The notes under the pieces: generated by a model
What the model saw: only the letters and a program-made list of their open reading frames with translations
Told to the model about the DNA's origin: nothing
Database searches by the model: none
Shown: positions 10,710-54,619 of the stretch, piece after piece
Position numbering within the stretch: position 1 is the stretch's first letter
Layout of the letters: each line of letters opens with the position of its first letter
Translations under genes and position numbers: made by a program
DNA from: Macrostomum lignano
Lineage: Eukaryota
Assembly: GCA_002269645.1 (NCBI GenBank)
Contig: NIVC01000045.1
Location: 372,001 to 436,000, forward strand
Direction: 5' to 3'
Length of the DNA stretch: 64,000 nucleotides

Positions 10710-10725
10710 GTATATATGACCGGCT

Positions 10726-11270
10726 CATCACAGATCTGCTGCAAAAGGCATTCCCGCACAAGCCAACGGAACAGCGTCGCATCATCTGGTTCGGCCCGTA
10801 ATACAGCTATTCGAATGAGCCTCTAGCTGCAACTCACCAGTGGCACCCAGCGGTGGAAGATCTCAGATATTTTCTTGAATTTAACGCCGAGCTTGAAATG
10901 CCAAAGTTTAAAAGCTGCCTGGTAAATTTCTACCAAAATGCCGACGATCGTATTCAATTTCATGCCAATGACGAGCCAGAGCTTGGTACTGACCCGTAAA
11001 TTGCTACGGTGTCGCAAGGGGAAGTGCGCAAGTTTCTGGTGCGGAACAAAGGCGAACGCGAAATTATTGCCATCTTTGACACGACTATTGGTTCAATCAT
11101 CATCATGGCCGGAGCGTGTCGAAGAAAATGTGAGCACAGTGTCCCAGCTGTCGATGTCTAGGAAGGATTCGCTCACCTTCAAGGTGACGCATCTCCCTGA
11201 CGCCAGCACACCGGGGCGCGGAGGCCCCATTCTGACTGCAGCAGCTCGCGACGGTCAAGGGCCTGGCAGT
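10726..11270 (+). pseudogene. Decayed AlkB-like domain from a relative of the AlkB-LINE ORF1
   Basis: QRRIIWFGP*YSYSNEPL...WHPAVEDLR...KSCLVNFYQNADDRIQFHANDEPELG...IATVS...IIIMAGACRRKCEHSVP is colinear with 23106-23645. It has stops and HxD changed to HAN. An ORF1-like VLEGAG...DLDAE segment lies at 9506-9586. Confidence 0.75.
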
Positions 11271-11279
11271 TGTTTGTTG

Positions 11280-11800
11280 GGCTCTGCCGGTCGCCAAAAA
11301 AGATGGCCAGATGAGGAACTTTATATTTTAGCCAGTTTTGAATCAAAGTTTGATCCAATTTTTTTTCCAATTTATGATGCAGCAATTAAAGAAAAAATTC
11401 TTCCAAATAGGACTCTCGATAGTATCAAGGGAGCCAGGCGGACTAAAACTTACAAACTTGTAGAGAAAATTAGAAAAGACAGAATTGATGAAGATGAGAG
11501 TGAGGTAAAAGGCAGAGAAAAAATAAAATTATTGAGAAGAAACTTAGTACTAATTTAACAGAAGAAAGAAAAGAGACTGAAAACCAAATAAAAACGATTA
11601 CAAACTTTGCAGATGAGGTGCTAGCAAGCCTAGACCCAAATATTGCATTTCCGGTAGCTGAGGAGACGGTAAATTCGGCAGCATTTGCTGACGACATGGC
11701 CATCTGCTCGTCCTCTGAAGCTGGCCTAGCTCAGCACCTTAAAATATTTGAAAAAACTCTTAAAGATACTGGACATGAAGTCAATACCGCGAAGAGCGCT
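11280..11800 (+). pseudogene. R2-like retroelement remnant (Myb-like domain and RT FADD segment, internally deleted)
   Basis: WPDEELYILA...LPNRTLDSIKGARRTKTYK, then LDPNIAF...VNSAAFADDMAI...GHEVNTAKS. Confidence 0.7.
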
Positions 11801-20475: not shown

Positions 20476-20592
20476 TCGGGTGGGAGAGGGTGGGTTTCAT
20501 ACTACTACAGAAAGTAGTTTGTCTTACGAAAACGAAGGCTTCGATTAGGAAAACGCTAAGAAGCTAGAATAGGAAGGGTGCGATTCAACATT

Positions 20593-20609
20593 CCGTAAAG
20601 ACGGTCTCT
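20593..20609 (+). ncRNA. 5' part of a spliced-leader RNA exon, interrupted by the retroelement array
   Basis: CCGTAAAGACGGTCTCT contains the CCGT...ACGG stem typical of flatworm SL 5' ends and matches the Macrostomum SL as I recall it (not verified by search). Confidence 0.65.
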
Positions 20610-21860
20610 AAGCTTGTCTAAGGGTTGTGCGCAATCCGATTGGCTATGCCAATTTCAAAGGGTCCGCCCCGGAGGGGCTGTGCCTGTTCTAAAAATAAAC
20701 CCTATTCTTTTTTCTAATTTCGGCCCTCGGCCTTGGTTTAGGGGGGGTGGTGCCCGGAGTGAGTTGGTTCTCTGGACTGCAGTGTGGCTAGGACGGGACT
20801 GAGCCCCCCGGTCGTACCCGCCCTGCAGGAAAGAAAATGACCAATTCACAAAGGTGTACGGTAGACCCAGTAGCATGCCAGCCCTGAGGCTGAGCACCCG
20901 GGCTGCAGGTCGGCAAGCTGCCTGCTCTAGGGCTATGGTGCTCCTCCCTTCTGCCAATCTTTTTTTCTGGGCTGGCATCCCAGCGCTGTTTTATCCCTAG
21001 CTTTGTGCCTTTGTGGCTTTTTATTCTTTTAATCTTTTATCTGGCCAATAGAAGCCTTCCAATTCTCGGAGTTATGAGCTCTGCCCTTGCCCGGTCCATC
21101 TTGCCCTGTCCTCGGGTCCATCTCCTGGCTCCTGCTGAAGGTCCCTGCTTGCGTGTCTCTGGCTCTCATCCTGACAGTGGATTGGTGTCCTGGGAAGGAT
21201 GTTCGTCCCGAACCGGGGACAACCGGCTGAGTCCGGAGTCCTCTTGCCCTGGGTGCCTCTTCTCCCGACCCCTTGGCCTGGCCCTCAATAATGAGCTGGA
21301 TAGGCGATGCCCTTGGGTTGGTAGCAATAGAGGTGTTGCCATGTCCGCCTAGAGTCTCCCCCTCGGATACAAGCCTTCCAGACTCACTCCAAAATAGAGC
21401 TGGGTAGTGAAAAGCCTTGAGGCTCGAGCCCTACAGTTGTCCAGTGCTGTTTAGGATCGCTCTTGGTAATTAGCTGCCCAGACTCGCTCCAATAGTTTAA
21501 GCCATTTCCGCAGGTTTAGGAGTAACTCCTCACTCGGACCGCTTTTTTCAGTAGTATTTCAAGCATTTCGCTTTCCAATTTTCTGCGCACTCCTAAAGAC
21601 TCGCTTGCTGGGGGGTGGCCTGGGTGGACTCGGTCCTAGCACCGTCCCTGATTCCACTGTTTGGGTTGGCGGTGTCTTGTACCGTAGGCTTGGGTCAACT
21701 CGCCCTTTCCCTAGCTTTAAGCTGGGTCCAATCCCAATGCATCCATGGGGTATCTCGGGCCCTGGACAGCTAATGCCTTGGCCCCTGGTAGTGCCCCTCT
21801 GCGGCAGAGCCCACCCCGGGCTGATCCGCGGGTAGCTAAGCTTCCCCCCCGTTTAACAAC
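20610..21860 (+). mobile_element. Array unit A: non-coding retroelement unit
   Basis: Starts at the SL motif and ends in the shared 3' hairpin module plus GTTTAACAAC. No recognisable protein domain. Confidence 0.6.
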
Positions 21861-21877
21861 AAAGACGGTCTCTTACT

Positions 21878-22182
21878 AGCTTTTCGCTCTCCAATTTTTC
21901 TGCGCACTCCCGAGGACTCGCTGGCTGGGGGGTGGCCTGGGTGGACTCGGTCCTAGCACCGTCCCTGATTCCACTGTTTCGGTTGGCGGTGTCTTGTACC
22001 ATAGGCTTGAAGTCCCTCGCCCTTTCCCTAGCTATAAGCTGGGTCCAATCCCAAGGTATCCATGGGGTATCTCGGGCCCTGGACAGCTAATGCCTTGGCC
22101 CCTGGTAGTGCCCCTCAGCGGCAGAGCCCACCCCGGGCTGATCCGCGGGCAGCTAAGCTTCCCACCCTCGTTTAACAACAAC
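21878..22182 (+). mobile_element. Array unit B: 5'-truncated copy of unit A
   Basis: Near-duplicate of ~21560-21860, bounded on both sides by AAAGACGGTCTCTTACT. Confidence 0.75.
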
Positions 22183-22222
22183 AAAGACGGTCTCTTACTG
22201 CGAAACCCCAATTTATTGCATG
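22183..22222 (+). ncRNA. Nearly complete SL exon sequence at the 5' end of the full-length LINE
   Basis: AAAGACGGTCTCTTACTGCGAAACCCCAATTTATTGCATG ends in ATG like flatworm SL exons, but is followed by ACC rather than a GT donor. Confidence 0.7.
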
Positions 22223-22379
22223 ACCGTCCGCGCGCGCGCAAAAATCTGCAAAGCAAAGAATTCCAAATTGCAACAAGGCCTGTGACTCTAATTGCCCATT
22301 GTTCTGCCTTCCACTAGTTCTTAACTTTGTGACAAGAGCTAATAGTCTTATTTTATAGTTAATAATAATATTAGCAGAA

Positions 22380-25349
22380 ATGAGCAAGCAGATCCCGCCT
22401 ACTAAAATTACGAAACCTTCCGGTCTTCCTGCGGCCAAGCGTGTCGATAACCGCTCATCGGTTGATAAGATGGAGGCCTTTGGCCGAAACCTGCTAGGCC
22501 TAGGCAAGAAACCAACACGGCCACCTGCTGGTCCCTCTGGCGCTGCAACTGCCTCTGGTGCTCCGAGCGCAGTTAGCAAAGAGCCCAATAGCAACAGGGC
22601 CTCCAGGAGTAGCGCAGACAGCATCCCGCCGGATGCCCCGTATAGTCTAGCAGCCATTAGCTGCCCGGCTGGTATGGACTGCGCACCAGCACCGCCATCG
22701 GACACGCCACCATCTCCTAGGGAAAAGGCTGAGGTAACTACGCCAGCTTCAATGCCAAATCCAGCCGAACTACCTGAGGTGCAATATTCTAATGACAACG
22801 CATCTACAAGACCAAAATCTCCGGTGCTTGCGATCCCAGCAGAGCAGCCAAAATCACCAGACGGCGCCATCTCCATATCGTCGGCAAGTAGCTCTGGCTC
22901 TGCGACTGTGTTGGAAGGGGCTGGCCAAGCCGGCTCCAAAGACCCCAACGCAGCCGCAGCAGCATCTGACTCTGTGTCTGAGGCAGACTCCGCGAACGCC
23001 GGCTGTGTTGATCTGGATGCTGAGGACGCAAGCATACCGTATGAAAATCCAATTGGCTTTCCAATAAGCGCGGACAAATCGGCACTTCAAGTCAAGCTGC
23101 CTAGCCAAGACGTACGGCTGGAGTATTACCCGAATATGCTCCGTAGCGTAGCCGCCGACGTCTATGACCGGTTGATCCAAGACCTCCTGCCTATTGCTAT
23201 ACGTCACCGGCCTCAGGAACAGCGACGAGTGGTGTGGTTCGGGCCGGAGTACTCTTACTCTGGAGTCCCGCTCGGCGCTAACAAAAAATGGCACCCGCTA
23301 GTTGAAGACATGAGAGACTACCTCGAGCTCAACGCGGACATTGGTGCATCAAAATTTAATAGCTGCCTCATAAACTTTTATGAAACGGCTGATGACTGCA
23401 TACCTTTCCACGCCGATAATGAACCCGAACTCGGCAGGGACCCTTTTATCGCTACGGTCTCCTTTGGTGCAGTACGCCAATTCCTAATTAAGAACAACGA
23501 GGACCAACGAATAGTAGCGCAATTCGAGACAAAGCCCGGCTCAGTGATAGTAATGTCCGGTGCATGCCAACGCAAATGTAAGCACAGTGTCCCAGGAGTC
23601 GGCGTCCAGGAGGGTGTACGCATTTCTCTCACCTTTAGGGTGACATATCCACCTGGCGTCGGCACGCCGGGACACGGAGGCCCGACTGCGGCAGCAGCAT
23701 TCGTTGGAGACGGGCCTGGCAGTGGCCGGGCGGGCACCAGCCTGGCTGCGCCGGGCTCCCGGACAGCTGCGACCAACGGGCAGCCAGGAGACTGCGGAGC
23801 AGCCGGCGCGTCTGGCTCTGCGGTCCCAGGCGGCCCACGAGCCCAGGGCAACGGCGGCGGCAGCGCCGGCGGTGCGGGGCGGGGCGGCAACCGTCGCTCC
23901 TATGCGACCATGGCGGCAAATCAGCAAAGACCACGACAACCTAATAGCAGTAATGTGGTGCCAGTGGTTTTCAACACAACAGCTGAAGCCAGCCAATTAG
24001 TATTTCTTAAGTGGCTCGCGGCCAACTTTCAAGGGTCGGCCCGAGCCACACTTACCAAATCATTAGCGCACGAATTTGGCTTCCTGGTTTTTCCGGCCAC
24101 GCCACGGGACCATCAAATTTTCCTGCGTGGGCCCCTGCGCGAGCCCCAGTTTGTCGGGGGTCCGGTTACTAGGAGGCTTCCGAAAGCTAGGCATGACCAA
24201 CAAGCGAGGCGGACTGCACCGCAGCGACCGATGACCCAGGAGATCCACTCTTTTGTCGTGCGCGGAGTGCCGCTCAACGTCAGTGCTGAAGACTTCAAGC
24301 GCCACCTGAAAGACAGTGCGGGCCTAAAAATTATCTCGGCTAGCCGCATTATTGCCAAAAGCAAAAATCAACCCACCTACCTGATGCGAGTCTTTGTCCA
24401 AAACAAGCAGACCGTGGACGCCTGTCTGGCAACAGGCATCATCACAGACTTCATAACGTACCAATGCGAGCCAAGCAGAACGGCGACTCCCGCCCGGGCT
24501 CCACAATGCCAAAAATGCCAGAGGTTCGGGCATCACGCCCAACGATGTAGAGCGGCCAAGCGCTGTCAAATCTGTGCGGCCGAGCATCACTGGCGTGAGT
24601 GCGACAGGCAAGATGCTGTCAAGTGCGCGAACTGCGGCGAGTCACACCGCGCTAATTATAGAAACTGCCAGGTAGCGATCGACAGCCACAGTGCGGCCCA
24701 AAGGCGTGCGGCTGCCTACGCAGCGGGCGCTCGTGAAGCCGCGGCTGGGACAGGCCAGTTGACCGCTCCACCATCAATGGCGGCAGCAGCGACAGCAGCA
24801 GCACCAGTATCGGCAGCGGCAGCAGCGGCGCCCCCCGCCCCCGCATTGAGACCAATATCGGCAGCGGCAGCAGCGGCGCCCCCCGCCCCCGCGCCGAGAC
24901 CAACATCGGCAGCAGTCCCGAGTTCGGCCGACGCTGCAGCACGGGCGCCAGCGGCGACAGGAGGCGACGATGACTCGTCCTGGCTCACCGGCCACGCCCT
25001 CCCTAGCCGGAAGCGCCCTGTGCGCGAATCGACCGACTCGGTATTGCAATCCACCGTGCCAAAAGCGACTCAAAACAATAATCCGCCGCCGAGTGTGAAC
25101 TTTGAACCGCTGATCCCAGGACTGGTGAGTGGGCTACTGCCTTGCCTGGTCCAAGCACTCGTAGAGGTGATTACGACGCTCTGGCCGAGTGCTGCCGAAC
25201 GGCCGCTTCCTACTGATGGCTCTGGTGACTCAGTGCCTGAAGTAGTGAGTAGGGTTCTGGCCCGTACACTCCAAGGAGCGTCGCTAAGTCATCAAAGCTC
25301 TGGTCAGCTATCGGGCGCTTTCCAGCGTCAGGCGGATGGCCGGACCTAG
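22380..25349 (+). CDS. LINE ORF1 (989 aa): disordered N-terminus, AlkB/2OG-Fe(II) dioxygenase, RRM-like region and three Cys/His zinc knuckles
   Basis: AlkB at ~23106-23645 with FNSCLINFY...FHAD (His 23409, Asp 23415), KHSVP (His 23583) and RISLTFR. Knuckles CQKCQRFGHHAQRC, CQICAAEHHWREC, CANCGESHRANYRNC. Confidence 0.92.
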   Translation: MSKQIPPTKITKPSGLPAAKRVDNRSSVDKMEAFGRNLLGLGKKPTRPPAGPSGAATASGAPSAVSKEPNSNRASRSSADSIPPDAPYSLAAISCPAGMDCAPAPPSDTPPSPREKAEVTTPASMPNPAELPEVQYSNDNASTRPKSPVLAIPAEQPKSPDGAISISSASSSGSATVLEGAGQAGSKDPNAAAAASDSVSEADSANAGCVDLDAEDASIPYENPIGFPISADKSALQVKLPSQDVRLEYYPNMLRSVAADVYDRLIQDLLPIAIRHRPQEQRRVVWFGPEYSYSGVPLGANKKWHPLVEDMRDYLELNADIGASKFNSCLINFYETADDCIPFHADNEPELGRDPFIATVSFGAVRQFLIKNNEDQRIVAQFETKPGSVIVMSGACQRKCKHSVPGVGVQEGVRISLTFRVTYPPGVGTPGHGGPTAAAAFVGDGPGSGRAGTSLAAPGSRTAATNGQPGDCGAAGASGSAVPGGPRAQGNGGGSAGGAGRGGNRRSYATMAANQQRPRQPNSSNVVPVVFNTTAEASQLVFLKWLAANFQGSARATLTKSLAHEFGFLVFPATPRDHQIFLRGPLREPQFVGGPVTRRLPKARHDQQARRTAPQRPMTQEIHSFVVRGVPLNVSAEDFKRHLKDSAGLKIISASRIIAKSKNQPTYLMRVFVQNKQTVDACLATGIITDFITYQCEPSRTATPARAPQCQKCQRFGHHAQRCRAAKRCQICAAEHHWRECDRQDAVKCANCGESHRANYRNCQVAIDSHSAAQRRAAAYAAGAREAAAGTGQLTAPPSMAAAATAAAPVSAAAAAAPPAPALRPISAAAAAAPPAPAPRPTSAAVPSSADAAARAPAATGGDDDSSWLTGHALPSRKRPVRESTDSVLQSTVPKATQNNNPPPSVNFEPLIPGLVSGLLPCLVQALVEVITTLWPSAAERPLPTDGSGDSVPEVVSRVLARTLQGASLSHQSSGQLSGAFQRQADGRT

Positions 25350-28235
25350 AAAAGTATAAAATAGAAATTTTCGGTAGTAACGGGCATGATGATAGCTCGA
25401 ACCCCACTGCCTCAGGGCTTAGGATCGCCCACCTAAACTGCAGGGGGATTATACCGAAACTAAAAGAACTCAGGCTCTGGGTCTCAGACCAAAAGTTGGA
25501 TATTGCTCTGTTCTCTGAGACCATCCTGAAAAATACCCAAGTATGCACTTTTCCGGGCTATGCTGCAGTGCGGTTTGATCTTCCAAACACGAAGCGTGGA
25601 CTCCTCCTTGTGCACACCCCTCGGGTAAAGGTAGCTGACGTCCAGCTCTCGTACGACAATGTCAACCATGAGGTCCTCACCTGCACAGTCACACCCGTTG
25701 ACGGTGCATGTCCACCTTTCCAACTCTCCCTGGTTTATCGGTCCCCATCGCCGGATAACCTCGACACAGGTCTTTTGACGAGGCTGTCCTCGGCCAAGCA
25801 CTCGCTCATCATGGGAGACCTAAATGCTAGACACAGCTTTTTGGGGGGCGAAAGTCGCAACAACAGAGCAGGACAGCAGCTCCATGATTGGCTCTGTGGC
25901 GATCCATCCCAACGCCCTACCGTTCTCAACCAACCAGGCCAGTTCACCAGAATAGCCCACCGGCAAGGCGCTGTGTCCCGGAATGTGCTTGACCTTGGGT
26001 TAGCCTCCGGTGACCTCGTCTCATATGTCCAAGACTTCAAGGTGGGCTCTGACCTGGACAGTGACCATCTCCCAATCATACTCACACTAGCGAGTAACTC
26101 CCCAGAGTGGCAAGGGCCGGATAAGGCCCGAAATTTTGCTAAAGCTAACTGGGAAGAGTTCCAAAACTCCCTGATGGAAAAGCTGGCAAACGCGTGGCCT
26201 CCAGACCTTAGTACTAGGCAGCAGATTGATGCGGAGGTCGACTTCATCACAAACGCGATCCAGAAAACCATTGAGGATAATGTCCCGGTCAGAAAAGGCC
26301 GTAGAGCACTCCCCCAAAGGATCATTGCCATGATCAAGGAGAGGAGGAAGCTCCGGCGTCTATACCACAGTACCAGGGAAGACAACTTTAGGCTGCTCGC
26401 GAATAGGAAGGCGAAGGAAATTAAAAGCGCTATCCATTCGTTTGAGCAGGGCCAGTTTACCCAATTGTGCGAGAAAATAGTTGAAAAAAGTCAATGCCGG
26501 AATGTCAAGGACTTCTGGCAAGACACAAAAAAATTGATGGGGCGTAAAAAGGGCACCACTATTCCGTCCTTGAACGATGGCGCCTCCCTCGCACATACTG
26601 ACTCGGACAAGGCGGAAATGTTGGCGAGTGCGCTAGATGCCAAAATGCGTCCGATCCCATCTACTGACGAGGATCTGAAGAAGCGGGTTGAGCAGGTCAT
26701 GAAGCTCCCCCTTTTCAGACCTGTCCCTCCGGGCGCCAAACCGCATATGGGCCACCCCCTGGAGGCTCCGTTCTCTGTTACAGACACCCTCTGGGAGCTG
26801 GACCATCTGAAAGTCGACAGTGCTCCGGGCCAAAGTTCCAAACTGCGTCCTTAAGCATGGCCTAGAGCCCATTGCGGTTACCCGCATTACCAAGCTCTTC
26901 AACGACTGTTATCGTACGGGCATCTTCCCATCGCAGTGGAAAAAAGCGGTGGTGACGATGATCCCTAAACCAGACAAACCGCCTGAGTCCCCGGGTTCCT
27001 ATCGGCCCATCAGCCTGACCTCCTGCCTCGGCAAGGTATTCGAGAAGTTATTGGTGAGGAGGCTGATGAAGCATCTTGAGGACCAAGGTATCCTCGGTGC
27101 GGACCAGTGCGCTTACAGGAAGGTCCACTCGACCTACGATAATCTCGTCCGCCTCGTCCAAGACGTCCAGGTGGGCAAAGCTAAACTCAAAAGGATCTTG
27201 GCCATACTCCTTGACGTACAAGCGGCGTTTGACTCGGTGTGGTATGACTACCTGCGTTTCAGGACTTTTGAAGTCAATACACCGGACGCCCTCGTCAGGA
27301 TCTGCTCCGACTATCTGGCAGACAGGCACATGCAGGTGAAGGTGAACGGGGCGCTCAGCCGGCCGTACGAATTGCAGGCAGGCGTCCCCCAGGGTGGCAT
27401 CTTAAGCCCTTTTCCTTTACCTGCTCTTCATCAGCACCATGCCTAGGCCGCAACAACCAAATCTTAAGCGAAGCCAATTCGCCGACGACATGGCGACATG
27501 GCTTCGGCGGACTCTTTTGCTGGCCTCAAAACGCTCCTGCAACCCTACCTCGACCGTGTGTGGAAATGGTGTCGGGGGCAGGGGATCAAAATCAACGCCA
27601 GCAAAAGCCAGGTTATCGCGTTTAACTATAAGCCAACTCAGCGGCTCGATCTTCGCCCCAAGCTGAAACTTGGTGGCACGAGCCTTGAGTACCAGGAAGA
27701 AGTCCGGTTCCTTGGTATGAACCTGGACTACAGGCTGACCCTCAACTCGCATATTGAAAGGGTAGTCAGCCATGGCAGGGCGCTTGCGCTATCCATCAAC
27801 CGCATTGCTAAACTAACCCGGCTAAGCAGCAATACACTAAAAATGCTATACAGGGCTTATGTTGAGAGTGCGCTGACGTACGGTGCCCCGGTGTTGAATA
27901 TTATAGCACCCAGTAATCTCAATAAGCTCCAAAAAATCTAAAACCTAGCCCTCCGGATCTGCTACGGTGCCCCCAGTTACACCCAGGTAGCCTACTTACA
28001 TGAGTTGGCAGCCATGCCGATGATGGCTGACAGGATCCGCGCCCTTTGCGTAGGCTGGCTCACGAAAGTGAAGGCTGCCGGGCACCATAACTTCCATATA
28101 GAACCGGAACTCCCAAGAGCTGCCCGAAACCGTCCCCCAGTGCTGAACCTGCTTTGGGACAGCCTGAAGAGGAGGCAGGTAAATAGACAAGCAGCTGCTA
28201 ATGCGGCAGCCCGTGCGGCCCGCAACCCGCCCTAG
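25322..28235 (+). pseudogene. LINE ORF2: apurinic endonuclease plus reverse transcriptase, with a few frameshifts and one stop
   Basis: LRIAHLNCRG, DIALFSET, IMGDLNARH, SDHLPI (APE); YRPISLTSCLGKVFE, LLDVQAAFDSVW, GVPQGGILSP, FADD (RT). It opens in the -1 frame relative to ORF1 with no nearby in-frame ATG. No RNase H recognised. Confidence 0.9.
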
Positions 28236-28865
28236 ACTTACTAGGTCGGCTACCCCACAGAACCTGGTGCGCCCCCAGACAGCGGCTAGCCCTTCTTTCC
28301 CATCCCATGGACCTGCAGGCTGTCAGTGCATGAATGAATAATTAGACCAAATTACTAAATAGGCGATGAATATTTAGCGGCGAGTGCTGGATCAGGCGGG
28401 GGTGCCTACGACCCAGTAACTAGGCAGTATAAGTAGCGATGCCGAACCGATGTACTGTGATCCGCCACCTACTTTTTCCGTATTCCGCCTTGCTTATATA
28501 ATTTTTCTTACAACCCAACTTTTATTTGCAATGCTGTTTTTACACCTGGCTTTTGCCCTGTTTTTATTTCAAATATTCGCGCTGATCCCCCTAAATAGGT
28601 CAAATTTATCTTTGTGAGGACCTGGCCCAAGCTAAATAGAGCACCCCACTATTAATCAGTTGCGACAAATACTTTTTTATTTATCCCAAAATGTAAATAG
28701 TTCAATATTAAGCGAATCTTTTATTAAATTTATTTTATTCTCTTTCGCTATACCAATATTCGCATTACCTTTTTTAATCAACATATTACATCGGCAGAGC
28801 CCTACCCGGGCTGATCCGAGAGTCCTACTTTGACTCGCTCGTTTAAAAAAAAAAGACGGTCTCTT

Positions 28866-29208
28866 CTAACTAACTAAATTATTTTATCACCTGGCTATAC
28901 TTGCAGTAGTCATTTTCAATTAATGCCAATACTACTCTAAATCTTAATTCAAGAATGCTTGCACTACCCCTTACAGTATGGTCCAGAGCTTTGTGAGGAC
29001 CCCCCCCCTCTATTCAGAAACTCCCCCTATTTTAGTGCAAATTAATCTTAATGAAGCCAAATGTAAATATTTTAAATACCAACTTGAAATTCTATTTTTA
29101 ATGCTTCGCCAACTAAATTCGTATATAAAATTAAAATAAATCGGCAGAGCCCATCTCGGGCTGATCCGAGGGTGCCTAACTTACACCCATTCGTTTAACA
29201 ACAACAAC
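28866..29208 (+). mobile_element. Array unit D: 3'-UTR-only insertion
   Basis: AT-rich ~340 bp ending in the shared hairpin module plus (AAC)4, bounded by AAAGACGGTCTCTT on both sides. Confidence 0.75.
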
Positions 29209-29222
29209 AAAGACGGTCTCTT

Positions 29223-32200
29223 CCGCGGAGCGGCCGGCGCGCCCGGCTCTGCAGTCCCTGGCGGCCCACGAGCCCAGGGCAACGGCGGCGGCAACGTCGG
29301 CGGTGCGGGGCGGGGCGGCTATCGCCGTTCCTACGCTGAAATGGCGGCGAATAACAACCAGGATGCATCACGGCCCCCGAACAATAACCGGGGAAGTAAT
29401 GTGGTACCAGTAGTGTTTAATACTGCGGCAGAAGCTAGTCAAATTGAGTTTCTAAAGTGGCTCGCGGCCAACTTCCAAGGGTCGGCCCGGGCTACACTCA
29501 CCAAAAAGTTGACTTATGAAGTCGGCTTCCTCGTGTTTCCGGCTACTCCGCGAGACCACCAGTTGTTCCTGCGTGGGCCTCTGCGCGAGACCCAGTTTGC
29601 TGGGGGGCCGGTAACGAGGCGTCTACCAAAGGCTCGACCGGACCCACGAGCTAGGCCTGCTGCGCCACAGCGACCCCGATGACCCGAGCGATCCACTCGT
29701 TCGTGGTGCGCGGCGTGCCTCAGGAGGTCGAGGCCAGCGACTTCAAGCGGCACCTGCAAGAGAGCGCGGGTCTTAATATTATATCAGCTAGCCGCATCAC
29801 TGCTAGGCGAGACAACAAGCCTACTAGCCTAATCAGAGTCTTTGTCCGTAACAAACAGACCGTTGATGCCTGTCTAGCCACAGGAATCGTTACGGATTTC
29901 ACAACCTACCAGTGCGAGCCAAACAGGACCGCAGCACCGGCACGAGCACCGCAGTGTCAAAACTGCCAGCGCTTCGGTCACCACGCCCAGAGGTGCAAGG
30001 CGGCCAAGCGTTGTCGGATCTGTGCGGCCGCGCACCACTGGCGAGACTGCGACAACCAAAATGCGGTAAAATGTGCGAACTGCAACGAGCCGCACAGAGC
30101 TAACTACCGCAACTGCCAGGTGGCGGTCGATTGCCACAGCGCGGCCCAAAGGCGTGTGGCTGCCTACGCAGCGGGCGCCCAGGAAGCCGCGGCTGAGATA
30201 GGCCGGTCGACCGCTCCACCACCTATTGCGGCAGTAGCGGCAGCAGTAGCACCAGCATCAGTAGCGGCAGTAGCGGCGTCCCCCGCCCCCGCATCGAGAC
30301 CAGCACCGGCAGCAGTCCCGAGTTCGGCCGACGCCGCAGCACGGGCGCCAACGGCGACAGGAGGCGATGATGACTCGTCCTGGCTCACCGGCCATGTCCT
30401 CCCAAGCCGGAAGCGCCCTGTGCGCGAATCGACCAACTCGGAATCGCAATCTACTGTGCCAAAAGTAACTCAAAATAACAATCCGCCGCCGAGTGTAAAT
30501 TTTGAACCGCTGATCCCAGGACTGGTGAGTGGGCTACTGCCTTGCCTGGTTCAAGCACTCGTAGAGGTGGTCAAGACGCTCTGGCCGAGTGCTGCCGAAC
30601 GCCAAAATGCGCCCGATCCCATCAACTGATGAAGATCTGAAGAAACGGGTTGAGCAGGCTATGAAGCTCCCCCTCTTTAGACCTGTCCCCCCGGGCGCAG
30701 AACCATACATGGGCCACCCCCTGGAGGCTCCTTTCTCTGTCACGGACACCCTCTTGGAGCTGGACCACCTAAAAGTAGACACTGCTCCGGGCCTGGACAA
30801 AGTTCGTAACTGCGTCCTTAAGCATGGCCTAGAGCCCATTGCGGTTACCCGCATTACCAAGCTCTTCAACGACTGTTATCGTACGGGCATCTTCCCATCG
30901 CAGTGGAAAAAAGCGGTGGTGACGATGATCCCTAAACCAGACAAACCGCCTGAGTCCCCGGGTTCCTATCGGCCCATCAGCCTGACCTCCTGCCTCGGCA
31001 AGGTGTTCGAGAAGTTATTGGTGAGGAGGCAGATGAAACATCTTGAGGACCAAGGTATCCTCGGTGCGGACCAGTGCGCCTACAGGAAGGTCCATTCGAC
31101 TTACGACAATCTTGTCCGCCTCGTTCAAGACGTCCAGGTGGGCAAAGCCAAACTAAAAAGATTGCTGGCCATTCTCCTTGACGTACAAGCGGCGTTTGAC
31201 TCGGTGTGGTACGACTACCTGAGGTTCAGGATGTACGAAGTCAACTCACCGGACGCCCTCGTCAGGATCTGCTCTGACTATCTAGCAGACAGGCTAATGC
31301 AGGTGAAGGTTAACGGAGCACTTAGTCAGCCGTACGAGTTGCAGGCGGGTGTCCCACAGGCCTGCAACAGGATGGAGTCGTCAGGATGGAGTCCCATCCC
31401 GAGCCCTTTCCTTTACCTGCTCTTCATCAGCACCATGCCTCGGCCAGGACAACCAAACCTTAAGCGAAGCCAATTCGCCGACGACATGGCCATCTGGGCC
31501 TCGGCGGACTCTTTTGCTGGCCTCAAGACACTCTTGCAACCTTCCTAGATCGCGTGTGGAAATGGTGTGGGGGGCAGGGGATCAAGATCAACGCCGGCAA
31601 GAGTCAGGTCATCGCGTTTAACTACAAGCTTACCCAGCGGCTCGACCTCCGCCCCAAGCTGAAACTTGGTGGCACGAGCTTTGAATACCAAGATGAAGTC
31701 CGGTTCCTTGGTATGAACCTGGACTACAGGCTGACTCTTAACTCGCATGTTGAAAGAGTAGTCAGTCATGGCCGGGCACTTGCGCTTTCCATCAACCGCA
31801 TTGCTAAACTGACCCGACTAAGCAGTAACACCCTAAAAATGCTCTACAGGGCTTATGTTGAGAGTGCGCTGACCTACGGTGCCCCGGTGCTGAATATTAT
31901 TGCACCCAGTAACCTCAATAAGCTCCAAAAAATCCAAAACCTAGCTCTCAGGATCTGCTATGGTGCCCCCAGTTACACCCAGGTAGCCTACTTACATGAG
32001 CTGGCAGCCATGCCTATGATGGCGGATAGGATTCGCGCCCTAGGCGTGGGCTGGCTCACCAAAGTGAAGGCTGCTGGGCACCATGACTTCCACATAGAAC
32101 CGGAACTCCCTAGAGCTGCCCGAAACCGCCCCCAGTGCTGAACCTGCTATGGGACAGCCTGAAGAGAAGGCAAGCAAATAGACAAGCAGCTGCGTATGCG

Positions 32201-33003
32201 GCGGCCCGTGCGGCCCAGAACCCGCCGTAGATCTGCTAGTTCAGCTGTTCCAATATATGGGTGCGCCCCCAAACAGTGGCTTGCCCCTCTTTCTCCTCTG
32301 TGAGGATCAATCCTCTGTCAGCGCACAATCAAACAAACCAAAATATTCAATAGGCGTAGAATAATGCGGCGAGTGCTGGACCAGGTGGGGGTGCCTACGA
32401 CCCAGTAACTATACAGTAAGAATTGCTGTGCCTACCTGTTAGTACTGCTGATGATACTGTGATCCGCCGCAGACCTCTTCCTGACTCCGCCTCTCTTTGC
32501 CTTTTTACAATCGAATTATTTTAAACTGCAAATGCTTCTTTTACACCTGGCTTTTGCCTTGCTTATATTTTTACTCTTCTTTTTATCCTAACCCAAATAT
32601 ACAAATAATGCTTCTTACATAAACTTTTAGTTATATGTGCCAACGAGGCCAATCCAATATATTTCGTGTAGGGGCTGCTACTAGTAGTAGTTCCTGCCGC
32701 ATAGCTATTATATTATTTTTTACTAAATACAAATATTTGAATACTGATTTAAAACCTTCGCGCTGATTCCCCTTTCGGTCCAAAATATCTTTGTGAGGAC
32801 CCGTCCCAATTTCTGTAGAGTTCCCCCTCTATCAGTTGCGACCACTTCTTTATTTTTATTCCTAAATGTAAATAATTAATTTAAATCGAATATTTTAACT
32901 CTCGTATAACCAATACTTAGCAAACTTTTTTTTAATTTAAATATATCGGCAGAGCCCTACCCGGGCTGAACCGAGGTGTCTTCAGCACCACTCGTTTAAC
33001 AAC
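29223..33003 (+). mobile_element. Array unit E: 5'-truncated, internally deleted LINE (ORF1 C-terminal half joined to RT; APE missing)
   Basis: Starts just downstream of AlkB. The junction at 30600/30601 joins unit-C-equivalent 25200 to ~26639. RT, 3' UTR and (AAC) tail are present. Confidence 0.88.
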
Positions 33004-33013
33004 AAAGACGGTC

Positions 33014-36000
33014 CTGCTGTGTTGGAAGGAGCTGGCCAAGCCGGCTCCGAAGACCCCAACGCAGCCGCAGCAGCATCTGAATCTGATTCTGCCTCCGTGG
33101 CGGATTCTGCGCGCGACGTCAACGTTGACCTAGATGCCGAGGACATTAGCTTACCTTACGAGAACCTAATCGCTTTTCCAAGAGGCGCAGACAAGTCCGG
33201 CATGATATCTAAGTTGTCCAGCCAAGACTTCCGCCTGGTCTACTATCCTAATATGCTACGCAGTGTTGCCATCGATGTTTATGACAGGCTAGTTCAAGAC
33301 CTTCTTCCAATTGCTGTGAGACATCGGCCCCAGGAACAGCGTCGAGTTGTGTGGTATTGCCCGGAGTATTCTTATTCCGGTGTCCCGCTTGGCGCTAACC
33401 TGAAGTGGCACCCATTAGTAAAGGTTATGCGAGATTATCTAGAGCTCAATGCAGACATAAACGCACCTAAATTCAATAGCTGCCTCATTAATTTCTACGA
33501 ATCGGCAGATGATTGTATACCATATCATGCCGATAACGAGCCAGAGCTTGGCCAAGACCCCTTCATTGCTACGGTCTCCTTCGGAGCCGTGCGCCAATTC
33601 TTGGTAAAAAATAACGAGGATCAGCGTGTAATTGCCCAATTTGAGACCAACCCCGGCTCGGTGATCGTAATGTCGGGAGCCTGTCAGCGAAGATGTAAGC
33701 ACAGTGTCCCAGGAGTCGGCGTCCAGGAGGGTGTACGCATCTCACTCACCTTTAGGGTGACCCATCCACCTGGCGTCGGCACACCGGGGCACGGAGGCGC
33801 GACAGCGGCAGCAGCACCCGTCGGGGATGGGCCTGGCAGAGGCGGGGCGGCTCCAGTCCTGCTACGTCGGGCCCCCGGACGAGCGTGGCGACCGGGCAAC
33901 CAGGCAGCAGTGGGGCGGCCGGCGCGCCCGGCCCTGCTGCGCTTGGCAGTTCCCGCAACCAAGTCCAAGACCGTAGCAGCAATGTTGGTGCGGGGCGCGG
34001 TGGCGCAGCTCAACGGCCTAACGTCCAAGGGCGCTCATATGCGTCAGCTGCGGGTCAGAATATTAATAATCAAATTAGGAATAATAATAATAATGCTGCA
34101 CCAGGCCGGCAGAATGTAGTGCCGGTCGTCTTTACCTTCGACGGCGACACCGGCGACAGCAGCTTCAGCCAAATTAGCTTCCTCAAATGGTTGGCGTCAA
34201 ACTTCCAGGGCAACGCCCGAGCTACGCTGATCATCAGATCTTCCTCCGAGGGCCGCTGAGGGAGCCGCACATAAATGGTGTACCAGTTAACCGTAGACTG
34301 CCTAATGCCAGAACAACGTATAACAGACCCGCTGACCGGCAACCTCCAGTCCAATCGGTGCACTCGGTAGTAGTCCGGGGAGTGCCGGTCGAGATTGAGA
34401 TGCCGGCGTTCATTCAGCACCTGCGGGAGGACGTGGGCTTGAAGATCATCTCCGCGAGCCGCATCACGTCACGAGCGCGCAACTAGCCGACTCACCTCGT
34501 CCGCCTATTTCTACCAAATAAAGCCACTGCGGATGCTTGCCTGGCGACAGGCATCGTATCGCAGTTCACGAGGTATGCCTGCGAACAAAGCAAGACGGCT
34601 GCTCCGGCTAGGGCGCTCCAGTGCCATAAGTGCCAGCGTTTCGGCCACAGCGCGAATCTGTGTCGTGCTGCTCCGCGCTGCAACATCTGTGCGGCGGCGC
34701 ACCGCTGGCAGAAGTGCCCGAACCCGGACGCGGCCAAATGTGCGAACTGTGGCGAGGCCCATCGAGCCAATCACAGGAACTGCCCTGTAGCTGCTTAGAA
34801 ACACAGCCAGGCGGCCCGGCGCGCTGCAGCCTACCAAGCCGGCGCCCGGGAAGCCATGGCAGCAGGGCAAGCAGCAGCTTTGCCACCAGTATCAGCAGCA
34901 GCAGTGATTGAGCGAGCTGCACCAATAGCAGCGCAGGCGACGGCAGCAGCAGCAGCGCCACCCGCCCCCGCACCAAGACCAGCTTCGGCGACTGCGCCTA
35001 GACCAACTGAGACCGCTGCACGGGCGCCAACGGCTACGGGGGTCACCGACGATGACTCGACCTGGCTTACAGGCCGTGGCCTCCCTAGTCGAAAGCGCCC
35101 TGTGCGCGACTCGGTTGACTCTGCGACCCAGACGCAGCCGCCAAGTGACCAGCCGCCTAGTATGCTCGCTGCCATGGAAGCTACGGTAAGTGGGCTCTTC
35201 CCCAAGCTGGTACAAGCACTCGTAGAGGTGCTTACGATCCTCTCACCGAGCCTAGTCGAACGGCCGCCTGCTACTGAAGGTACCGGTCAAACGGTGCCAG
35301 ATGTAGTAGGTAGGGTTCTGACCTGGGTCCTCGCGGGGGGATCGGAAAGTCACCAAGGCTCTGGTCAGCTGCTTGGCGCCCCCCTGGCGGCAGGCGGATA
35401 ACCAGACCTAGAATATAAAGTGAATAATAATCTTCGGTGATAATGAGCAAGATAGTTCCAACCCCACTGTCTTAGGGCTTAGGATCGCCCACCTAAACTG
35501 CAGGGGGATTATACCGAAGCTAAAAGAACTTAGGCTCTGGGTCTCAGAAAACAGCGCCACATCTAACTTTTGGTCTGAGACCATTCTGAAAAATACCCAA
35601 GTATGTAAATTTCCGGGCTATGCTGCAGTGCGGTTTGACCTTCCGAATACGAAGCGCGGACTCCTCCTTGTTCACTCCCCACGGGTTAAGGTAGCTGACG
35701 TCCAAGCTCTCGTATGACAACATCAACCATGAAGTTCTTACCTGCACGGTCACGCCTCTTGACGGAGCTTGCCCTGCATTTCATCTGGCCTTGATTTATC
35801 GGTCCCCATCGCCGGACAACCTTGATGTCGGTCTGATGACTCGGCTGTCTTCGGTCAAGTACTCTCTTATAATGGGTGACCTCAACGCCAGGCTCAGCTT
35901 TTTGGGGGGCGAGAGTCGCAACAACAGGGCTGGTCAACAGCTTCACGATTGGCTCTGCGGCGACCCCATCCATCGTCCCACCGTCCTTAACCAACCAGGT

Positions 36001-36436
36001 CAGTTCACCAGGATTGCCCACAAGAATGGTACGGTCTCTCGGAATGTGCTGGACCTTGGTCTGGCCTCCGGTGACCTAGTCCCCTTTATCCAGGACTTCA
36101 AAGTGGGTGACGACCTAAATAGCGACCACCTTCCAATTGTTCTCACTCTGGCGAACAACTCCCAGATTGGCAAGGGCCGGAGAAGGCTCGCAACTTTGCC
36201 AAAGCCAACTGGGAGGAGTTCCAGAACTCGCTAATGGAAAAACTGATTGACGCGTGGCCTCCCGACCTCAACACTAGGCAGCAAATTGACGCGGAGGTCG
36301 ACATTATTACAGGCGCCATCCAGGAAACTGTTGAGCAAAATTTCCCGGTCAGAAAAGGCCGTAGAGCCCTCCCCCAGAGGATCATTGCTATGATCAAGGA
36401 GAGGAGGAGGCTCCGGCGACTGTACCACAGTACCAG
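33014..36436 (+). mobile_element. Array unit F: 5'-truncated sister LINE with AlkB, zinc knuckles and APE, cut off by Gypsy sequence
   Basis: AlkB at ~33220-33760 with HAD at 33526-33534, KHSVP and RISLTFR intact. Knuckles at ~34620-34790; APE at ~35480-36200. Homology to unit C stops at 36436. Confidence 0.88.
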
Positions 36437-39400: not shown

Positions 39401-39970
39401 AGTATGGTGTACCAGCGTGGCTGCACACTGACCAAGGAACGAATTTCACTGGAAAAGACTTTAAGAAGTTTTGTGAGCTGTACGGCATTAGGCACACGAC
39501 CACAACGCCTTATAATCCTAGTTCGAATGGCCAGGTGGAAAATCTCAACAAGACAATCAAGAGTGTACTCACGTGCCTGCTGGAGAAGAATCTTTAAGAT
39601 TGGGACACCTTCCTCCCAGCATGCATGATCGCCTTGCGATCTCGCGTTCACCCAGTTACAGGGTTTACGCCCTACTTCTTGGTCTTTGGAAGAGAATTCC
39701 GGATGCCCATGGATAATGAGCTTCGGGTCCCACCTGAGTATCCGGACTTGCCAACGTACGTCCAAGACTTCCAGAAGAGACTGGAGGAGGCTAACAAGTT
39801 AGCTCAGGACCGAGTAAAGCTGCATCAGGAACTTCGCGATGAGCATTATGAGAATCGCCCGAAGGCCAAACAACTTTCGCCTGGAGACTTAGTCTTCTTG
39901 AACAACCCAGTCTTAGATCAGTCTTGGGAAGCGCAGAAATTTCACAGGCTGTGTATGAAGTAGTAGAGCG
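36437..39970 (+). mobile_element. Ty3/Gypsy pol region (RT, RNase H, integrase), element 1, 5'-truncated
   Basis: YSSPILVVPKKD, LDLAQGFYQI, YMDDIVI, VLDCDASG, RTDHRAL; integrase H...H...C..C, CDVVGP, HTDQGTNF, GQVENLN. Confidence 0.92.
38390..38550 (+). repeat. Three ~60-bp tandem repeats encoding SCC/TCC-x-SVxR between RNase H and integrase
   Basis: CATGTTGT(C/T)CCTCAGTG(G/A)ACCG occurs three times. Confidence 0.75.
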
Positions 39971-48350: not shown

Positions 48351-48351
48351 A

Positions 48352-52706: not shown

Positions 52707-52722
52707 AATTTGCTATTAAAAG

Positions 52723-54154: not shown

Positions 54155-54158
54155 ACCC

Positions 54159-54560: not shown

Positions 54561-54619
54561 TTTTTATGAGGTTTATTAAACTTTCTCTTAAACCTAAACC
54601 CAATATCCACCTCCTAAAC

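What the first reader, a model, noticed from the sequence alone, without database searches (positions are those of the whole stretch)
22380..25349. Catalytically intact AlkB dioxygenase fused into a LINE ORF1 (gag-like) protein
Seen: an ALKBH2/3-like domain with the HxD...H iron triad and RxxLTFR 2OG-binding motif, in the same uninterrupted ORF as the RRM-like region and zinc knuckles. It is conserved in sister unit F despite many synonymous-looking changes. Established: AlkB enzymes oxidatively demethylate m1A/m3C in single-stranded nucleic acids, and some plant RNA viruses carry AlkB in their replicase. Inference: ORF1p would deliver a demethylase onto the element RNP, repairing RT-blocking methyl lesions or countering methylation-based host marking. 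I cannot say whether this fusion is already catalogued.
Basis: partly seen in the sequence, partly recalled or inferred. Interest (0 to 1): 0.88.

Follow-up and report, generated by a model that had tools for sequence, protein, structure and literature searches.

The report
LINE gag protein carrying AlkB demethylase
A flatworm (Macrostomum) LINE retrotransposon has an ALKBH3-type methyl-lesion-removing enzyme built into its RNA-packaging ORF1 protein, kept under strong selection across a whole lineage of elements, which suggests base methylation limits reverse transcription and that the element carries its own eraser.

Summary
Window 22380-25349 (+) is one uninterrupted 989-codon ORF. It encodes a disordered N-terminus, an ALKBH3-like Fe(II)/2OG dioxygenase (Pfam E=2e-22; Foldseek TM 0.84 to human ALKBH3), a ~100-aa disordered linker, two RRMs and three CCHC knuckles. 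An APE-endonuclease/RT ORF2 follows, so it is a LINE ORF1. N332/Y334, H344/D346, H402 and R414/R420 are present.

dN/dS for the AlkB core between units C and F is 0.03-0.045, as low as or lower than EN and RT.

The fusion is not a one-off. Exhaustive HMMER found 757-962-aa AlkB+RRM+knuckle proteins at 33-39% identity, including a contig with intact ORF1 and ORF2 (L001) and several unnamed Macrostomum lignano proteins. Catalytic residues are invariant in all 13 aligned proteins, and the LINE-borne AlkBs form one clade (93% bootstrap).

The most likely function, which is inferred and not tested, is cis-acting removal of RT-blocking m1A/m3C-type lesions from the element's RNA or ssDNA intermediates.

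I found no paper describing AlkB in a LINE. The nearest precedents are AlkB in plant RNA viruses and an ALKBH5-like ORF in orchid Gypsy elements.

Side finding: the units lie head-to-tail, and unit C starts with a spliced-leader-like 35-mer.

The parts
21562..22199 (+). Two tandem ~320-bp units (21562-21877 and 21878-22199, 93% identical). They share only the ~80-nt 3'-terminal motif with the LINE, so they are probably SINE-like partners or tail-sharing short elements.
22188..22222 (+). Spliced-leader-like 35-mer CGGTCTCTTACTGCGAAACCCCAATTTATTGCATG, 32/35 identical to the published M. lignano SL. It is followed by ACCG, not the GTAAG donor. Its first 9-12 nt overlap the tail of the upstream unit.
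22223..22379 (+). 5'UTR of unit C, between the SL-like leader and the ORF1 ATG.
22380..25349 (+). ORF1 of unit C, 989 aa, uninterrupted (AlkB-ORF1p).
22380..23120 (+). N-terminal Ala/Gly/Pro/Ser-rich region (aa 1-247, 51% A+G+P+S), presumed disordered. aa 1-224 were not modelled and aa 225-247 were modelled confidently. No significant homology was found; there is only a weak collinear EAFGRNLLGL motif shared with M. lignano P0169.
23121..23654 (+). ALKBH3-like Fe(II)/2-oxoglutarate dioxygenase domain (aa 248-425) with N332/Y334, H344/D346, H402 and R414/R420.
23655..23951 (+). Disordered Gly/Ala/Arg-rich linker (aa 426-524; pLDDT <35; omega ~0.5).
23964..24473 (+). Two RRM domains (aa 529-599 and 623-698).
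24507..24668 (+). Three CCHC zinc knuckles (aa 710-723, 729-741, 749-763).
24690..25346 (+). C-terminal Ala/Pro-rich tract followed by a conserved helical tail (aa 771-989).
25385..28233 (+). ORF2 of unit C: APE-type endonuclease (~25385-26080) and RT (~26960-27725). It is broken: no in-frame ATG, a frameshift between 26725 and 26835, disruption at 27395-27500 (stops at ~27444 and ~27462, or two local frameshifts), and a stop at 27939.
28234..28866 (+). 3'UTR of unit C, ending in the conserved terminal motif (28791-28866): CGGCAGAGCCC-N4-GGGCTGATCCGAG ... CGTTTAA-A10-GACGGTCTCTT.
28867..29222 (+). Unit X: a heavily 5'-truncated copy consisting of 3'UTR and terminal motif only.
29223..33016 (+). 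Unit E: 5'-truncated at the position equivalent to 23794 (inside the linker, so it has no AlkB). It also has an internal deletion of the EN region (equivalent to 25202-26621) and ends in the same terminal motif.
33017..36436 (+). Unit F: 5'-truncated at the position equivalent to 22906 (aa 176). Its AlkB domain is intact inside ORF 33019-34119, the rest of ORF1 is frameshifted, and ORF2 is cut off by a Gypsy insertion at about 36.7 kb.
10712..11288 (+). Decayed AlkB fragment of a related subfamily (60% aa identity), with 3 stop codons and HxD changed to HxN.
63040..63744 (+). AlkB domain of a third subfamily (38% identical to unit C, 79% to M. lignano A0A1I8GKP7). It is open, with catalytic residues intact.

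Best explanation
Shown: the ORF is the ORF1 (gag-like) gene of an APE-type non-LTR retrotransposon from a Macrostomum flatworm. Its RNA-binding core is the standard Type I layout (two RRMs, then three CCHC knuckles). An ALKBH3-type Fe(II)/2-oxoglutarate dioxygenase sits N-terminal to that core on a ~100-residue flexible linker. The domain appears to have been captured once by an ancestor of this LINE lineage. It has since diversified together with the rest of ORF1p under purifying selection as strong as that on the endonuclease and reverse transcriptase.

Inferred mechanism: ORF1p coats the element's own RNA in cis, so many tethered demethylase domains are held against the single-stranded template. 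There they would oxidatively remove N-methyl adducts on the Watson-Crick face (1-methyladenine, 3-methylcytosine and similar), which are the canonical ALKBH3 substrates in ssRNA and ssDNA and which stall reverse transcriptases. The same activity could also work on the single-stranded DNA exposed during target-primed reverse transcription. Either way it would raise the yield of full-length cDNA. Whether the methyl groups come from chemical damage or from host enzymes is open.

My confidence by step: the fusion is real and selected, ~0.95; the domain is catalytically active, ~0.8; the main substrate is m1A/m3C-type lesions on the element's own RNA or ssDNA, ~0.45.
For: Identity and architecture. 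Downstream EN/RT ORF2. Selection: the AlkB core has omega 0.03-0.045 between units C and F (81 identical, 77 synonymous-only, 20 replacement codons), compared with EN 0.06-0.10 and RT 0.13-0.16. Neutral decay after insertion can only inflate omega, so the estimate is conservative. Recurrence: P0017-P0020 (757-962 aa) align across AlkB, RRMs and knuckles at 33-39% identity. L001 has an intact 843-aa AlkB-ORF1 and an intact 948-aa EN+RT ORF2. L005 in the M. lignano reference genome has two head-to-tail copies. NxY, HxD, the distal H and RxxLTFR are invariant in all 13 aligned proteins at 24% mean column identity. The LINE AlkBs are monophyletic at 93% bootstrap. AlkB and RRM/knuckle identities give the same sister pairs. 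ALKBH3-type assignment: 85 bits to ALKBH3 against 46 bits to ALKBH2; Foldseek ranks ALKBH3 (TM 0.84) above ALKBH2, with E. coli AlkB, ALKBH5 and ALKBH6 far behind. Established knowledge: ALKBH3 acts on m1A/m3C in ssDNA and RNA; these lesions block RT; plant-virus AlkB domains demethylate RNA in vitro (as summarised in PMC9289625).
Against: No activity, substrate or expression data exist. The ALKBH3 beta-hairpin region (the IREDITYQQPR stretch in the alignment) is shorter and different here (IRHRPQEQRR), so strand and substrate preference cannot be read off by homology. Unit C itself is a dead element because its ORF2 is broken, so this particular copy is not evidence of current activity. Its fully open 989-codon ORF1 next to a broken ORF2 is unexplained: it may be chance, use of ORF1p in trans, or co-option. 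The CpG observed/expected ratio of the LINE units (0.74-0.95) gives no sign of heavy DNA methylation of these copies. The donor of the domain is unresolved.
Confidence: 0.6

Rival explanations
1. The domain is an m6A eraser. It strips N6-methyladenosine from the element's RNA, or from host mRNAs, to change RNA stability, localisation or translation. This is what was proposed for the orchid Gypsy ALKBH5-like protein, and it fits the literature on m6A control of L1.
For: An LTR retrotransposon lineage carries a biochemically verified m6A demethylase (PMC9289625). m6A affects L1 activity in mammals (PMC7873242, listed).
Against: The domain belongs to the ALKBH2/3 clade, not ALKBH5, FTO or ALKBH9/10. 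ALKBH5 structures match far worse (Foldseek E ~4e-8, TM ~0.55, against 5e-17 and 0.84 for ALKBH3). ALKBH5 does not appear among the sequence hits at E<0.01.
Confidence: 0.12
2. The target is DNA. The domain would repair 3-methylcytosine or 1-methyladenine in the single-stranded target DNA or first-strand cDNA during TPRT. The lesions might include 3mC made as an off-target product of host DNMTs, which Macrostomum retains.
For: ALKBH3 acts on ssDNA, and the best structural matches are ALKBH3-ssDNA complexes. DNMT1 and DNMT3 introduce 3mC and co-evolve with ALKB2, and M. lignano is reported to retain DNMT1, DNMT3 and ALKB2 (PMC9246332).
Against: The domain is fused to the RNA-packaging protein, not to ORF2p, which works at the DNA. 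CpG observed/expected of the units is near 0.8-0.95, with no signature of heavy methylation. This rival overlaps with the best explanation and may be a second substrate rather than an alternative.
Confidence: 0.18
3. The AlkB fold serves only as an extra single-strand nucleic-acid-binding or chaperone module and catalysis is irrelevant.
For: ORF1p accessory domains are often binding modules, such as PHD, CTD and CCHC (PMC4120745).
Against: All metal and 2OG ligands (NxY, HxD, H, RxxLTFR) are invariant across proteins that share only 24% mean identity. They are lost only in a copy that also has stop codons. A pure binding role would not preserve them.
Confidence: 0.05
4. The ORF at 22380-25349 is not a working transposon gene. 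It would be a co-opted host gene, or a chance-open relic, given that it lies in a dead element.
For: ORF2 of the same unit has at least four disabling lesions in ~2.85 kb, while the 2.97-kb ORF1 has none. At equal lesion rates, the chance of an intact ORF1 is roughly 1% (my estimate).
Against: The unit sits in a head-to-tail array of truncated copies of the same element inside a TE-rich region. There is no evidence of a single-copy orthologous gene. Intact two-ORF relatives exist. Some of the frameshifts could be assembly errors.
Confidence: 0.05

Closest known systems
Type I LINE ORF1p, subtypes IB and IC (Khazina & Weichenrieder classification as extended by Metcalfe & Casane 2014, PMC4120745)
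   Same: The core is two RRMs immediately upstream of three gag-like CCHC knuckles, encoded upstream of an APE+RT ORF2. Subtype IC already shows that an accessory domain (PHD) can sit N-terminal to this core.
   Different: The accessory domain here is an enzyme, an ALKBH3-type dioxygenase. The only other enzymatic ORF1 domain catalogued in that paper is the esterase of Type IV. AlkB is not among the domains it lists (CC, RRM, CTD, CCHC, PHD, esterase, zf/lz).
Orchid (Phalaenopsis) Ty3/Gypsy elements with an ALKBH5-like ORF (PMC9289625)
   Same: A retrotransposon lineage captured an AlkB-family 2OG dioxygenase, kept its cofactor-binding residues and diversified into subfamilies afterwards. It was proposed to act on the element's own RNA.
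   Different: That case is an LTR element and not a LINE. The domain sits in a separate ORF2, not fused to the RNA-packaging protein. It belongs to the ALKBH5/9B (m6A eraser) clade, not ALKBH2/3. The host is a plant. Its activity was demonstrated, whereas here it was not.
AlkB domains in plant RNA virus replicases (Alpha-/Betaflexiviridae, Closteroviridae; cited in PMC9289625)
   Same: An AlkB domain is embedded in a replication-associated polyprotein of an RNA-templated genetic element. The proposed role is removing methyl lesions from the single-stranded RNA genome.
   Different: Those are viruses that replicate with an RdRp, and the domain is in the replicase. Here the element is reverse-transcribing and the domain is in the nucleic-acid-coating protein.
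Human ALKBH3 (PDB 2iuw, 8jnk, 8jnr)
   Same: Best sequence and fold match. It has the same NxY, HxD...H and RxxLTFR constellation and a single-strand-type enzyme architecture.
   Different: Identity is about 28-30%. The beta-hairpin and one loop are shorter. The domain is fused to RRMs and knuckles rather than free-standing. It falls in a separate clade from animal ALKBH3 in the NJ tree.
Retrotransposons that captured other methylation machinery (DNMT-carrying and MBD-carrying retrotransposons, de Mendoza et al.; the MBD paper appears in the reference list of PMC9246332, the DNMT case is from my own knowledge)
   Same: A mobile element acquires a host-type enzyme or reader that deals with nucleic-acid methylation.
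   Different: Those are writers or readers of 5mC in LTR or DIRS-type elements. This one is an eraser or repair enzyme in a LINE.

Membership tests
AlkB family, ALKBH2/3 subgroup of Fe(II)/2OG dioxygenases | Double-stranded beta-helix (jelly-roll) fold with the AlkB nucleotide-recognition extension | tested here: met
   The AF2 model has pLDDT ~85-95 over the domain. Foldseek: ALKBH3 E=5e-17, TM 0.84; ALKBH2 TM ~0.78.
AlkB family, ALKBH2/3 subgroup of Fe(II)/2OG dioxygenases | HxD...H iron-binding triad | tested here: met
   H344, D346 and H402 are present and invariant in 13 family members.
AlkB family, ALKBH2/3 subgroup of Fe(II)/2OG dioxygenases | 2-oxoglutarate ligands (NxY and RxxxxxR) | tested here: met
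   N332/Y334 and R414/R420 (RISLTFR) are present and invariant.
AlkB family, ALKBH2/3 subgroup of Fe(II)/2OG dioxygenases | ALKBH3-type rather than ALKBH2-type strand-selection hairpin | tested here: inconclusive
   The hairpin region aligns but is shorter (IRHRPQEQRR against IREDITYQQPR). Overall scores favour ALKBH3: 85 bits against 46 bits.
AlkB family, ALKBH2/3 subgroup of Fe(II)/2OG dioxygenases | Oxidative demethylase activity on m1A/m3C | not testable with these tools
   This needs a biochemical assay.
APE-type non-LTR retrotransposon (LINE) | ORF2 with an APE-like endonuclease followed by a reverse transcriptase, on the same strand downstream of ORF1 | tested here: met
   Exo_endo_phos_2 and RVT_1 are found in unit C. 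An intact version exists in L001.
APE-type non-LTR retrotransposon (LINE) | 5'-truncated copies sharing a common 3' end | tested here: met
   Units X, E and F start at different internal positions. C, X and E end at the same terminal motif.
APE-type non-LTR retrotransposon (LINE) | Target-site duplications flanking insertions | tested here: inconclusive
   The units abut one another head-to-tail, so flanks cannot be separated from neighbouring copies.
Type I ORF1p (RRM immediately upstream of CCHC knuckles) | At least one RRM directly followed by CCHC zinc knuckle(s) | tested here: met
   Two RRMs (model pLDDT 90; tandem-RRM Foldseek hits) are followed by three CCHC motifs. The definition is taken from PMC4120745.
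Jockey clade/lineage (by RT phylogeny) | Placement of APE+RT within the Jockey lineage in a reference RT tree (for example with RTclass1) | not tested
   No reference LINE set was available. ORF2 homologues carry no informative names. The only hint is that pseudoscorpion proteins with PRE_C2HC, EN and RT hit the knuckle region.
LTR-retrotransposon AlkB capture (orchid Gypsy type) | LTR element with a separate ALKBH5-like ORF | tested here: not met
   This element has an APE+RT ORF2 and no LTR, integrase or protease. AlkB is fused in ORF1 and is ALKBH3-like.
Spliced-leader-gene-specific LINEs (NeSL/CRE/SLACS/CZAR type; from my own knowledge) | Restriction-like endonuclease and insertion at a fixed position in SL RNA genes | tested here: not met
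   The endonuclease is APE-type. The SL-like 35-mer is not followed by the SL gene donor GTAAG, and no SL RNA gene body was found. Whether SL genes are a natural target remains open.

The most novel reading that the evidence does not exclude
Retroelements of flatworms and probably other invertebrates have repeatedly kept or exchanged an ALKBH3-type eraser because Watson-Crick-face base methylation, whether damage or a host-installed mark, is a real barrier to reverse transcription in vivo. That would make this the first LINE-encoded nucleic-acid repair or anti-restriction enzyme. Two further observations would extend this if confirmed. First, an AlkB ORF of the same clade sits directly upstream of a Penelope-like RT/GIY-YIG ORF (L004). 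Second, unit C begins with a spliced-leader-like sequence whose first 14 nt are repeated at the element's own 3' terminus. This is a terminal redundancy that could let the element pass as a trans-spliced mRNA, or build head-to-tail arrays.
Probability: 0.25. Interest if true: 0.85.

Novelty: new variant of a known kind. Interest (0 to 1): 0.72.

Why it matters
LINE ORF1 proteins are regarded as RNA-binding chaperones. Per PMC4120745, the only enzymatic accessory domain catalogued in them is an esterase. A conserved, apparently active ALKBH3-type demethylase in ORF1p says that base methylation on the template is costly enough to a retrotransposon to pay for about 180 extra codons. That cost has been paid across subfamilies sharing only ~35% identity.

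This makes an open question directly testable: do m1A/m3C-type modifications, whether damage or host-installed, restrict reverse transcription in vivo? The test is to mutate H344/D346 in an intact family member. M. lignano has transgenesis and RNAi, so it is a tractable host.

There is also a practical warning. These TE-borne copies are annotated as ordinary 'Fe2OG dioxygenase' genes and could distort ALKBH presence/absence or copy-number calls in flatworm genomes. Such calls have been used to argue for DNMT-ALKB2 co-evolution.

Tried and rejected
1. The full-length ORF1p as a word-indexed homology query returned nothing, probably because its low-complexity tracts filled the candidate list. 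The AlkB domain alone and the exhaustive HMMER search both worked.
2. An exact look-up of the 989-aa product found no called gene, so the source record was not identified. Assignment to Macrostomum rests on 73-79% protein matches to M. lignano entries and on the SL-like 35-mer.
3. I first read unit E as an AlkB-less or internally deleted variant. I rejected this: the '5'UTR match' is the terminal motif of the preceding truncated copy X, so E is simply 5'-truncated.
4. Rfam found nothing in 20500-37000 at E<=1, so the ~80-nt terminal motif is not a known ribozyme or RNA family.
5. No SL-like sequence or terminal motif occurs in L001-L005, so this feature is not family-wide.
6. ORF2 homologue names were uninformative for clade assignment.
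7. The N-terminal 247 aa against M. lignano P0169 gave E=0.66, which is not significant.
8. CpG observed/expected was uninformative about methylation.
9. An NJ tree could not resolve whether the donor was a host ALKBH3, a bacterium or something else.
10. PDB and NCBIfam searches with the L004 RT/GIY-YIG protein gave nothing decisive.


Full report
**Observation.** The window holds an uninterrupted 989-codon ORF at 22380-25349 on the + strand. Pfam finds a single significant domain, 2OG-FeII_Oxy_2, at aa 279-420 (E=2e-22, 80.8 bits against a cut-off of 31.2). By sequence, the closest solved structures are human ALKBH3 (E~3e-23) and then ALKBH2 (E~3e-11). Three CCHC knuckles follow at aa 710-723, 729-741 and 749-763. 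The ORF pieces immediately downstream carry Exo_endo_phos_2 and RVT_1, so this is the ORF1 of an APE-type LINE.

**Structure.**
- An AlphaFold2 model built on 13 homologues gives a confident AlkB jelly-roll (pLDDT ~85-95), then a disordered linker of about 100 residues, then folded domains.
- Foldseek against the PDB ranks ALKBH3 first (E=5e-17, TM 0.84) and ALKBH2 next. E. coli AlkB, ALKBH5 and ALKBH6 are far behind.
- A second model of aa 525-770 (pLDDT 90) shows two beta-alpha-beta-beta-alpha-beta domains. These hit tandem-RRM proteins such as NONO, HuR, U2AF65, Sxl and PABP RRM1-2.
- ORF1p is therefore: presumed-disordered N-terminus, AlkB, linker, RRM, RRM, 3 x CCHC, Ala-rich C-terminal tail.
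- In the published classification (PMC4120745), the RRM/knuckle core is Type I, subtype IB. Subtype IC shows that an N-terminal accessory domain (PHD) can precede this core. AlkB is not among the ORF1 domains listed there.

**Selection.** Unit F (33017-36436) shares the AlkB domain with unit C.
- Over the 178-codon core, 81 codons are identical, 77 differ only synonymously and 20 change the amino acid. Omega is 0.03-0.045 by three methods, and dS is near saturation.
- In the same comparisons the endonuclease gives 0.06-0.10, the RT 0.13-0.16 and the RRM/knuckle region 0.05-0.22. The linker and C-terminal tail give about 0.5-0.9.
- Neutral decay after insertion can only push omega upward, so the constraint on AlkB in the active lineage was at least as strong as on the core enzymes.
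- Of the four AlkB copies in the window, three (C, F and the one at 63 kb) keep all catalytic residues. The fourth, at 10.7 kb, has three stop codons and HxD changed to HxN.

**The fusion recurs in other elements and samples.**
- An exhaustive phmmer search of 1.8 billion representative proteins with aa 225-770 found proteins that align across both halves: P0017 (757 aa, 39%), P0018 (962 aa, 35%), P0019 (892 aa) and P0020 (843 aa). It also found several M. lignano proteins.
- All of these carry PF13532.
- The named ones are 'Fe2OG dioxygenase domain-containing' or hypothetical proteins of Macrostomum lignano.
- P0020 lies on a 9-kb contig (L001) with an intact 843-aa AlkB-ORF1 and an intact 948-aa EN+RT ORF2. 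P0018 is also followed directly by an ORF2.
- In the M. lignano reference genome, L005 holds two head-to-tail copies.
- Across 13 aligned proteins with 24% mean column identity, the NxY, HxD, distal His and RxxLTFR residues are invariant.
- In an NJ tree, the LINE-borne AlkBs form one clade (93% bootstrap). This clade is separate from an animal ALKBH3 clade (93%) and from bacterial AlkBs. Deeper nodes are unresolved, so the donor is unknown.
- Pairwise AlkB identity and RRM/knuckle identity give the same sister pairs. That fits one capture followed by co-divergence.
- ORF1 relatives of ordinary length without AlkB exist (P0033 and P0054, ~375 aa), so the AlkB state is derived.

**State of the copies in the window.**
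- Unit C has a complete ORF1 but a broken ORF2. There is no in-frame ATG, a frameshift between 26725 and 26835, disruption at 27395-27500 and a stop at 27939.
- Unit E is 5'-truncated inside the linker and has also lost the EN region.
- Unit F is 5'-truncated at aa 176, frameshifted after AlkB, and interrupted by a Gypsy element.
- The contrast in unit C between an open 2.97-kb ORF1 and a multiply broken ORF2 is noteworthy. At equal lesion rates the chance is roughly 1% (my estimate). It remains unexplained.

**Mechanism (inferred).** ALKBH3 is a single-strand-specific demethylase for 1-methyladenine and 3-methylcytosine in RNA and ssDNA, and these lesions block reverse transcriptases (established knowledge). 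ORF1p binds the element's RNA in many copies. A demethylase on a flexible tether would therefore sweep the template, and perhaps the single-stranded DNA at the integration site, and so increase full-length cDNA synthesis.
- The m6A-eraser alternative is disfavoured by the clade assignment.
- A DNA-directed role is a live second possibility. It might be linked to DNMT-generated 3mC in a host that keeps DNMT1, DNMT3 and ALKB2 (PMC9246332).
- A purely structural role is unlikely given the invariant ligands.

**Comparison with what is known.** Ten full-text searches found no description of an AlkB domain in a non-LTR retrotransposon. The closest precedents are the AlkB domains of plant RNA viruses and a Phalaenopsis Ty3/Gypsy lineage. 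The Gypsy lineage has a separate ALKBH5-like ORF with demonstrated m6A demethylase activity (PMC9289625). The present case differs in element class, in being fused to the RNA-coating protein, and in AlkB subfamily. Repbase could not be consulted. I rate it a new variant of a known kind.

**Side observations.**
- Units rep1, rep2, C, X, E and F lie head-to-tail with no spacer. C, X and E all end in the same ~80-nt motif, which has a small invariant hairpin and ends ...CGTTTAA(CAA)n/A10-GACGGTCTCTT.
- The last 14 nt of that motif equal the 5' end of the Macrostomum spliced leader as assembled from RNA.
- Unit C continues straight into the rest of an SL-like 35-mer (32/35 identical to the M. lignano SL). 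That 35-mer is joined to the 5'UTR rather than to the SL-gene splice donor.
- So the template RNA of unit C probably carried an SL-like leader, and the element has short terminal redundancy. How this relates to array formation or transcription is unresolved.
- Separately, an AlkB ORF of the same clade (P0171) sits about 100 bp upstream of an ORF with a YIDD RT box and a GIY...YVG motif (L004). That is a tentative Penelope-like element.

Noticed in passing
window 22188-22222: A 35-mer is 32/35 identical to the published M. lignano spliced leader. It sits directly at the 5' end of LINE unit C and is joined to the 5'UTR instead of the SL-gene donor GTAAG. This suggests the template RNA carried an SL, either by trans-splicing or by mimicry.
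   Followed up: partly
window 21802-21880, 22119-22199, 28791-28866, 29142-29222, 32946-33016: A conserved ~80-nt motif (invariant hairpin GAGCCC-N4/5-GGGCT, then CGTTTAA, a CAA or A run, and GACGGTCTCTT) forms the 3' terminus of the LINE copies and of two ~320-bp SINE-like units. Its last 14 nt equal the 5' end of the Macrostomum SL. Every LINE unit starts immediately after it, giving a spacer-less head-to-tail array. There is no Rfam match.
   Followed up: partly
L004 2120-5158 and 5266-7398: An AlkB protein of the same clade as the LINE AlkBs (P0171, 1012 aa, no RRM/knuckle part) lies ~100 bp upstream of an ORF with a YIDD RT box and a GIY-YIG-type motif (weak Pfam hits, E~0.002 each). This may be a Penelope-like element that also carries AlkB.
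   Followed up: partly
window 23794-25201 vs 29225-30601, and 26622-28429 vs 30582-32418: Divergence between units C and E is mosaic: dS is ~0.9-1.8 over the linker/RRM/knuckle part but ~0.14-0.4 over the C-terminal tail and RT. This suggests recombination between subfamilies.
   Followed up: no
window 22380-25349 vs 25385-28233: In unit C, ORF1 is fully open over 989 codons while ORF2 has several frameshifts and stops. This could be chance, assembly error, or selection on ORF1 alone.
   Followed up: partly
P0035 / P0173 (M. lignano BOX15_Mlig032459): A 263-aa M. lignano protein with a full-length AlkB domain (121 bits) groups loosely with animal ALKBH3. It is a candidate for the host's own gene. 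The many TE-borne AlkB copies annotated as ordinary genes could confound ALKBH presence or copy-number calls in flatworms.
   Followed up: no
P0026 (M. lignano A0A1I8G3B4, 572 aa): This ORF1 relative (45% identical over the linker/RRM part) is named 'HTH La-type RNA-binding domain-containing protein' by UniProt and lacks AlkB. It may be another N-terminal accessory domain in a sister LINE. Pfam found nothing.
   Followed up: no
window 36753-41252: A Ty3/Gypsy-type element (RT, RNase H, integrase) is inserted into LINE unit F. A second RT/RNase H fragment lies at 44772-45548.
   Followed up: no
window 50600-57069: There are Maverick/Polinton-like genes on both strands: A32-type packaging ATPase, protein-primed type B DNA polymerase and an endonuclease VII-like domain.
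   Followed up: no
window 48350-49356: A tandem repeat array of about 1 kb, with copies ~85% identical and a short period of roughly 23 bp judging from the self-alignment offsets.
   Followed up: no
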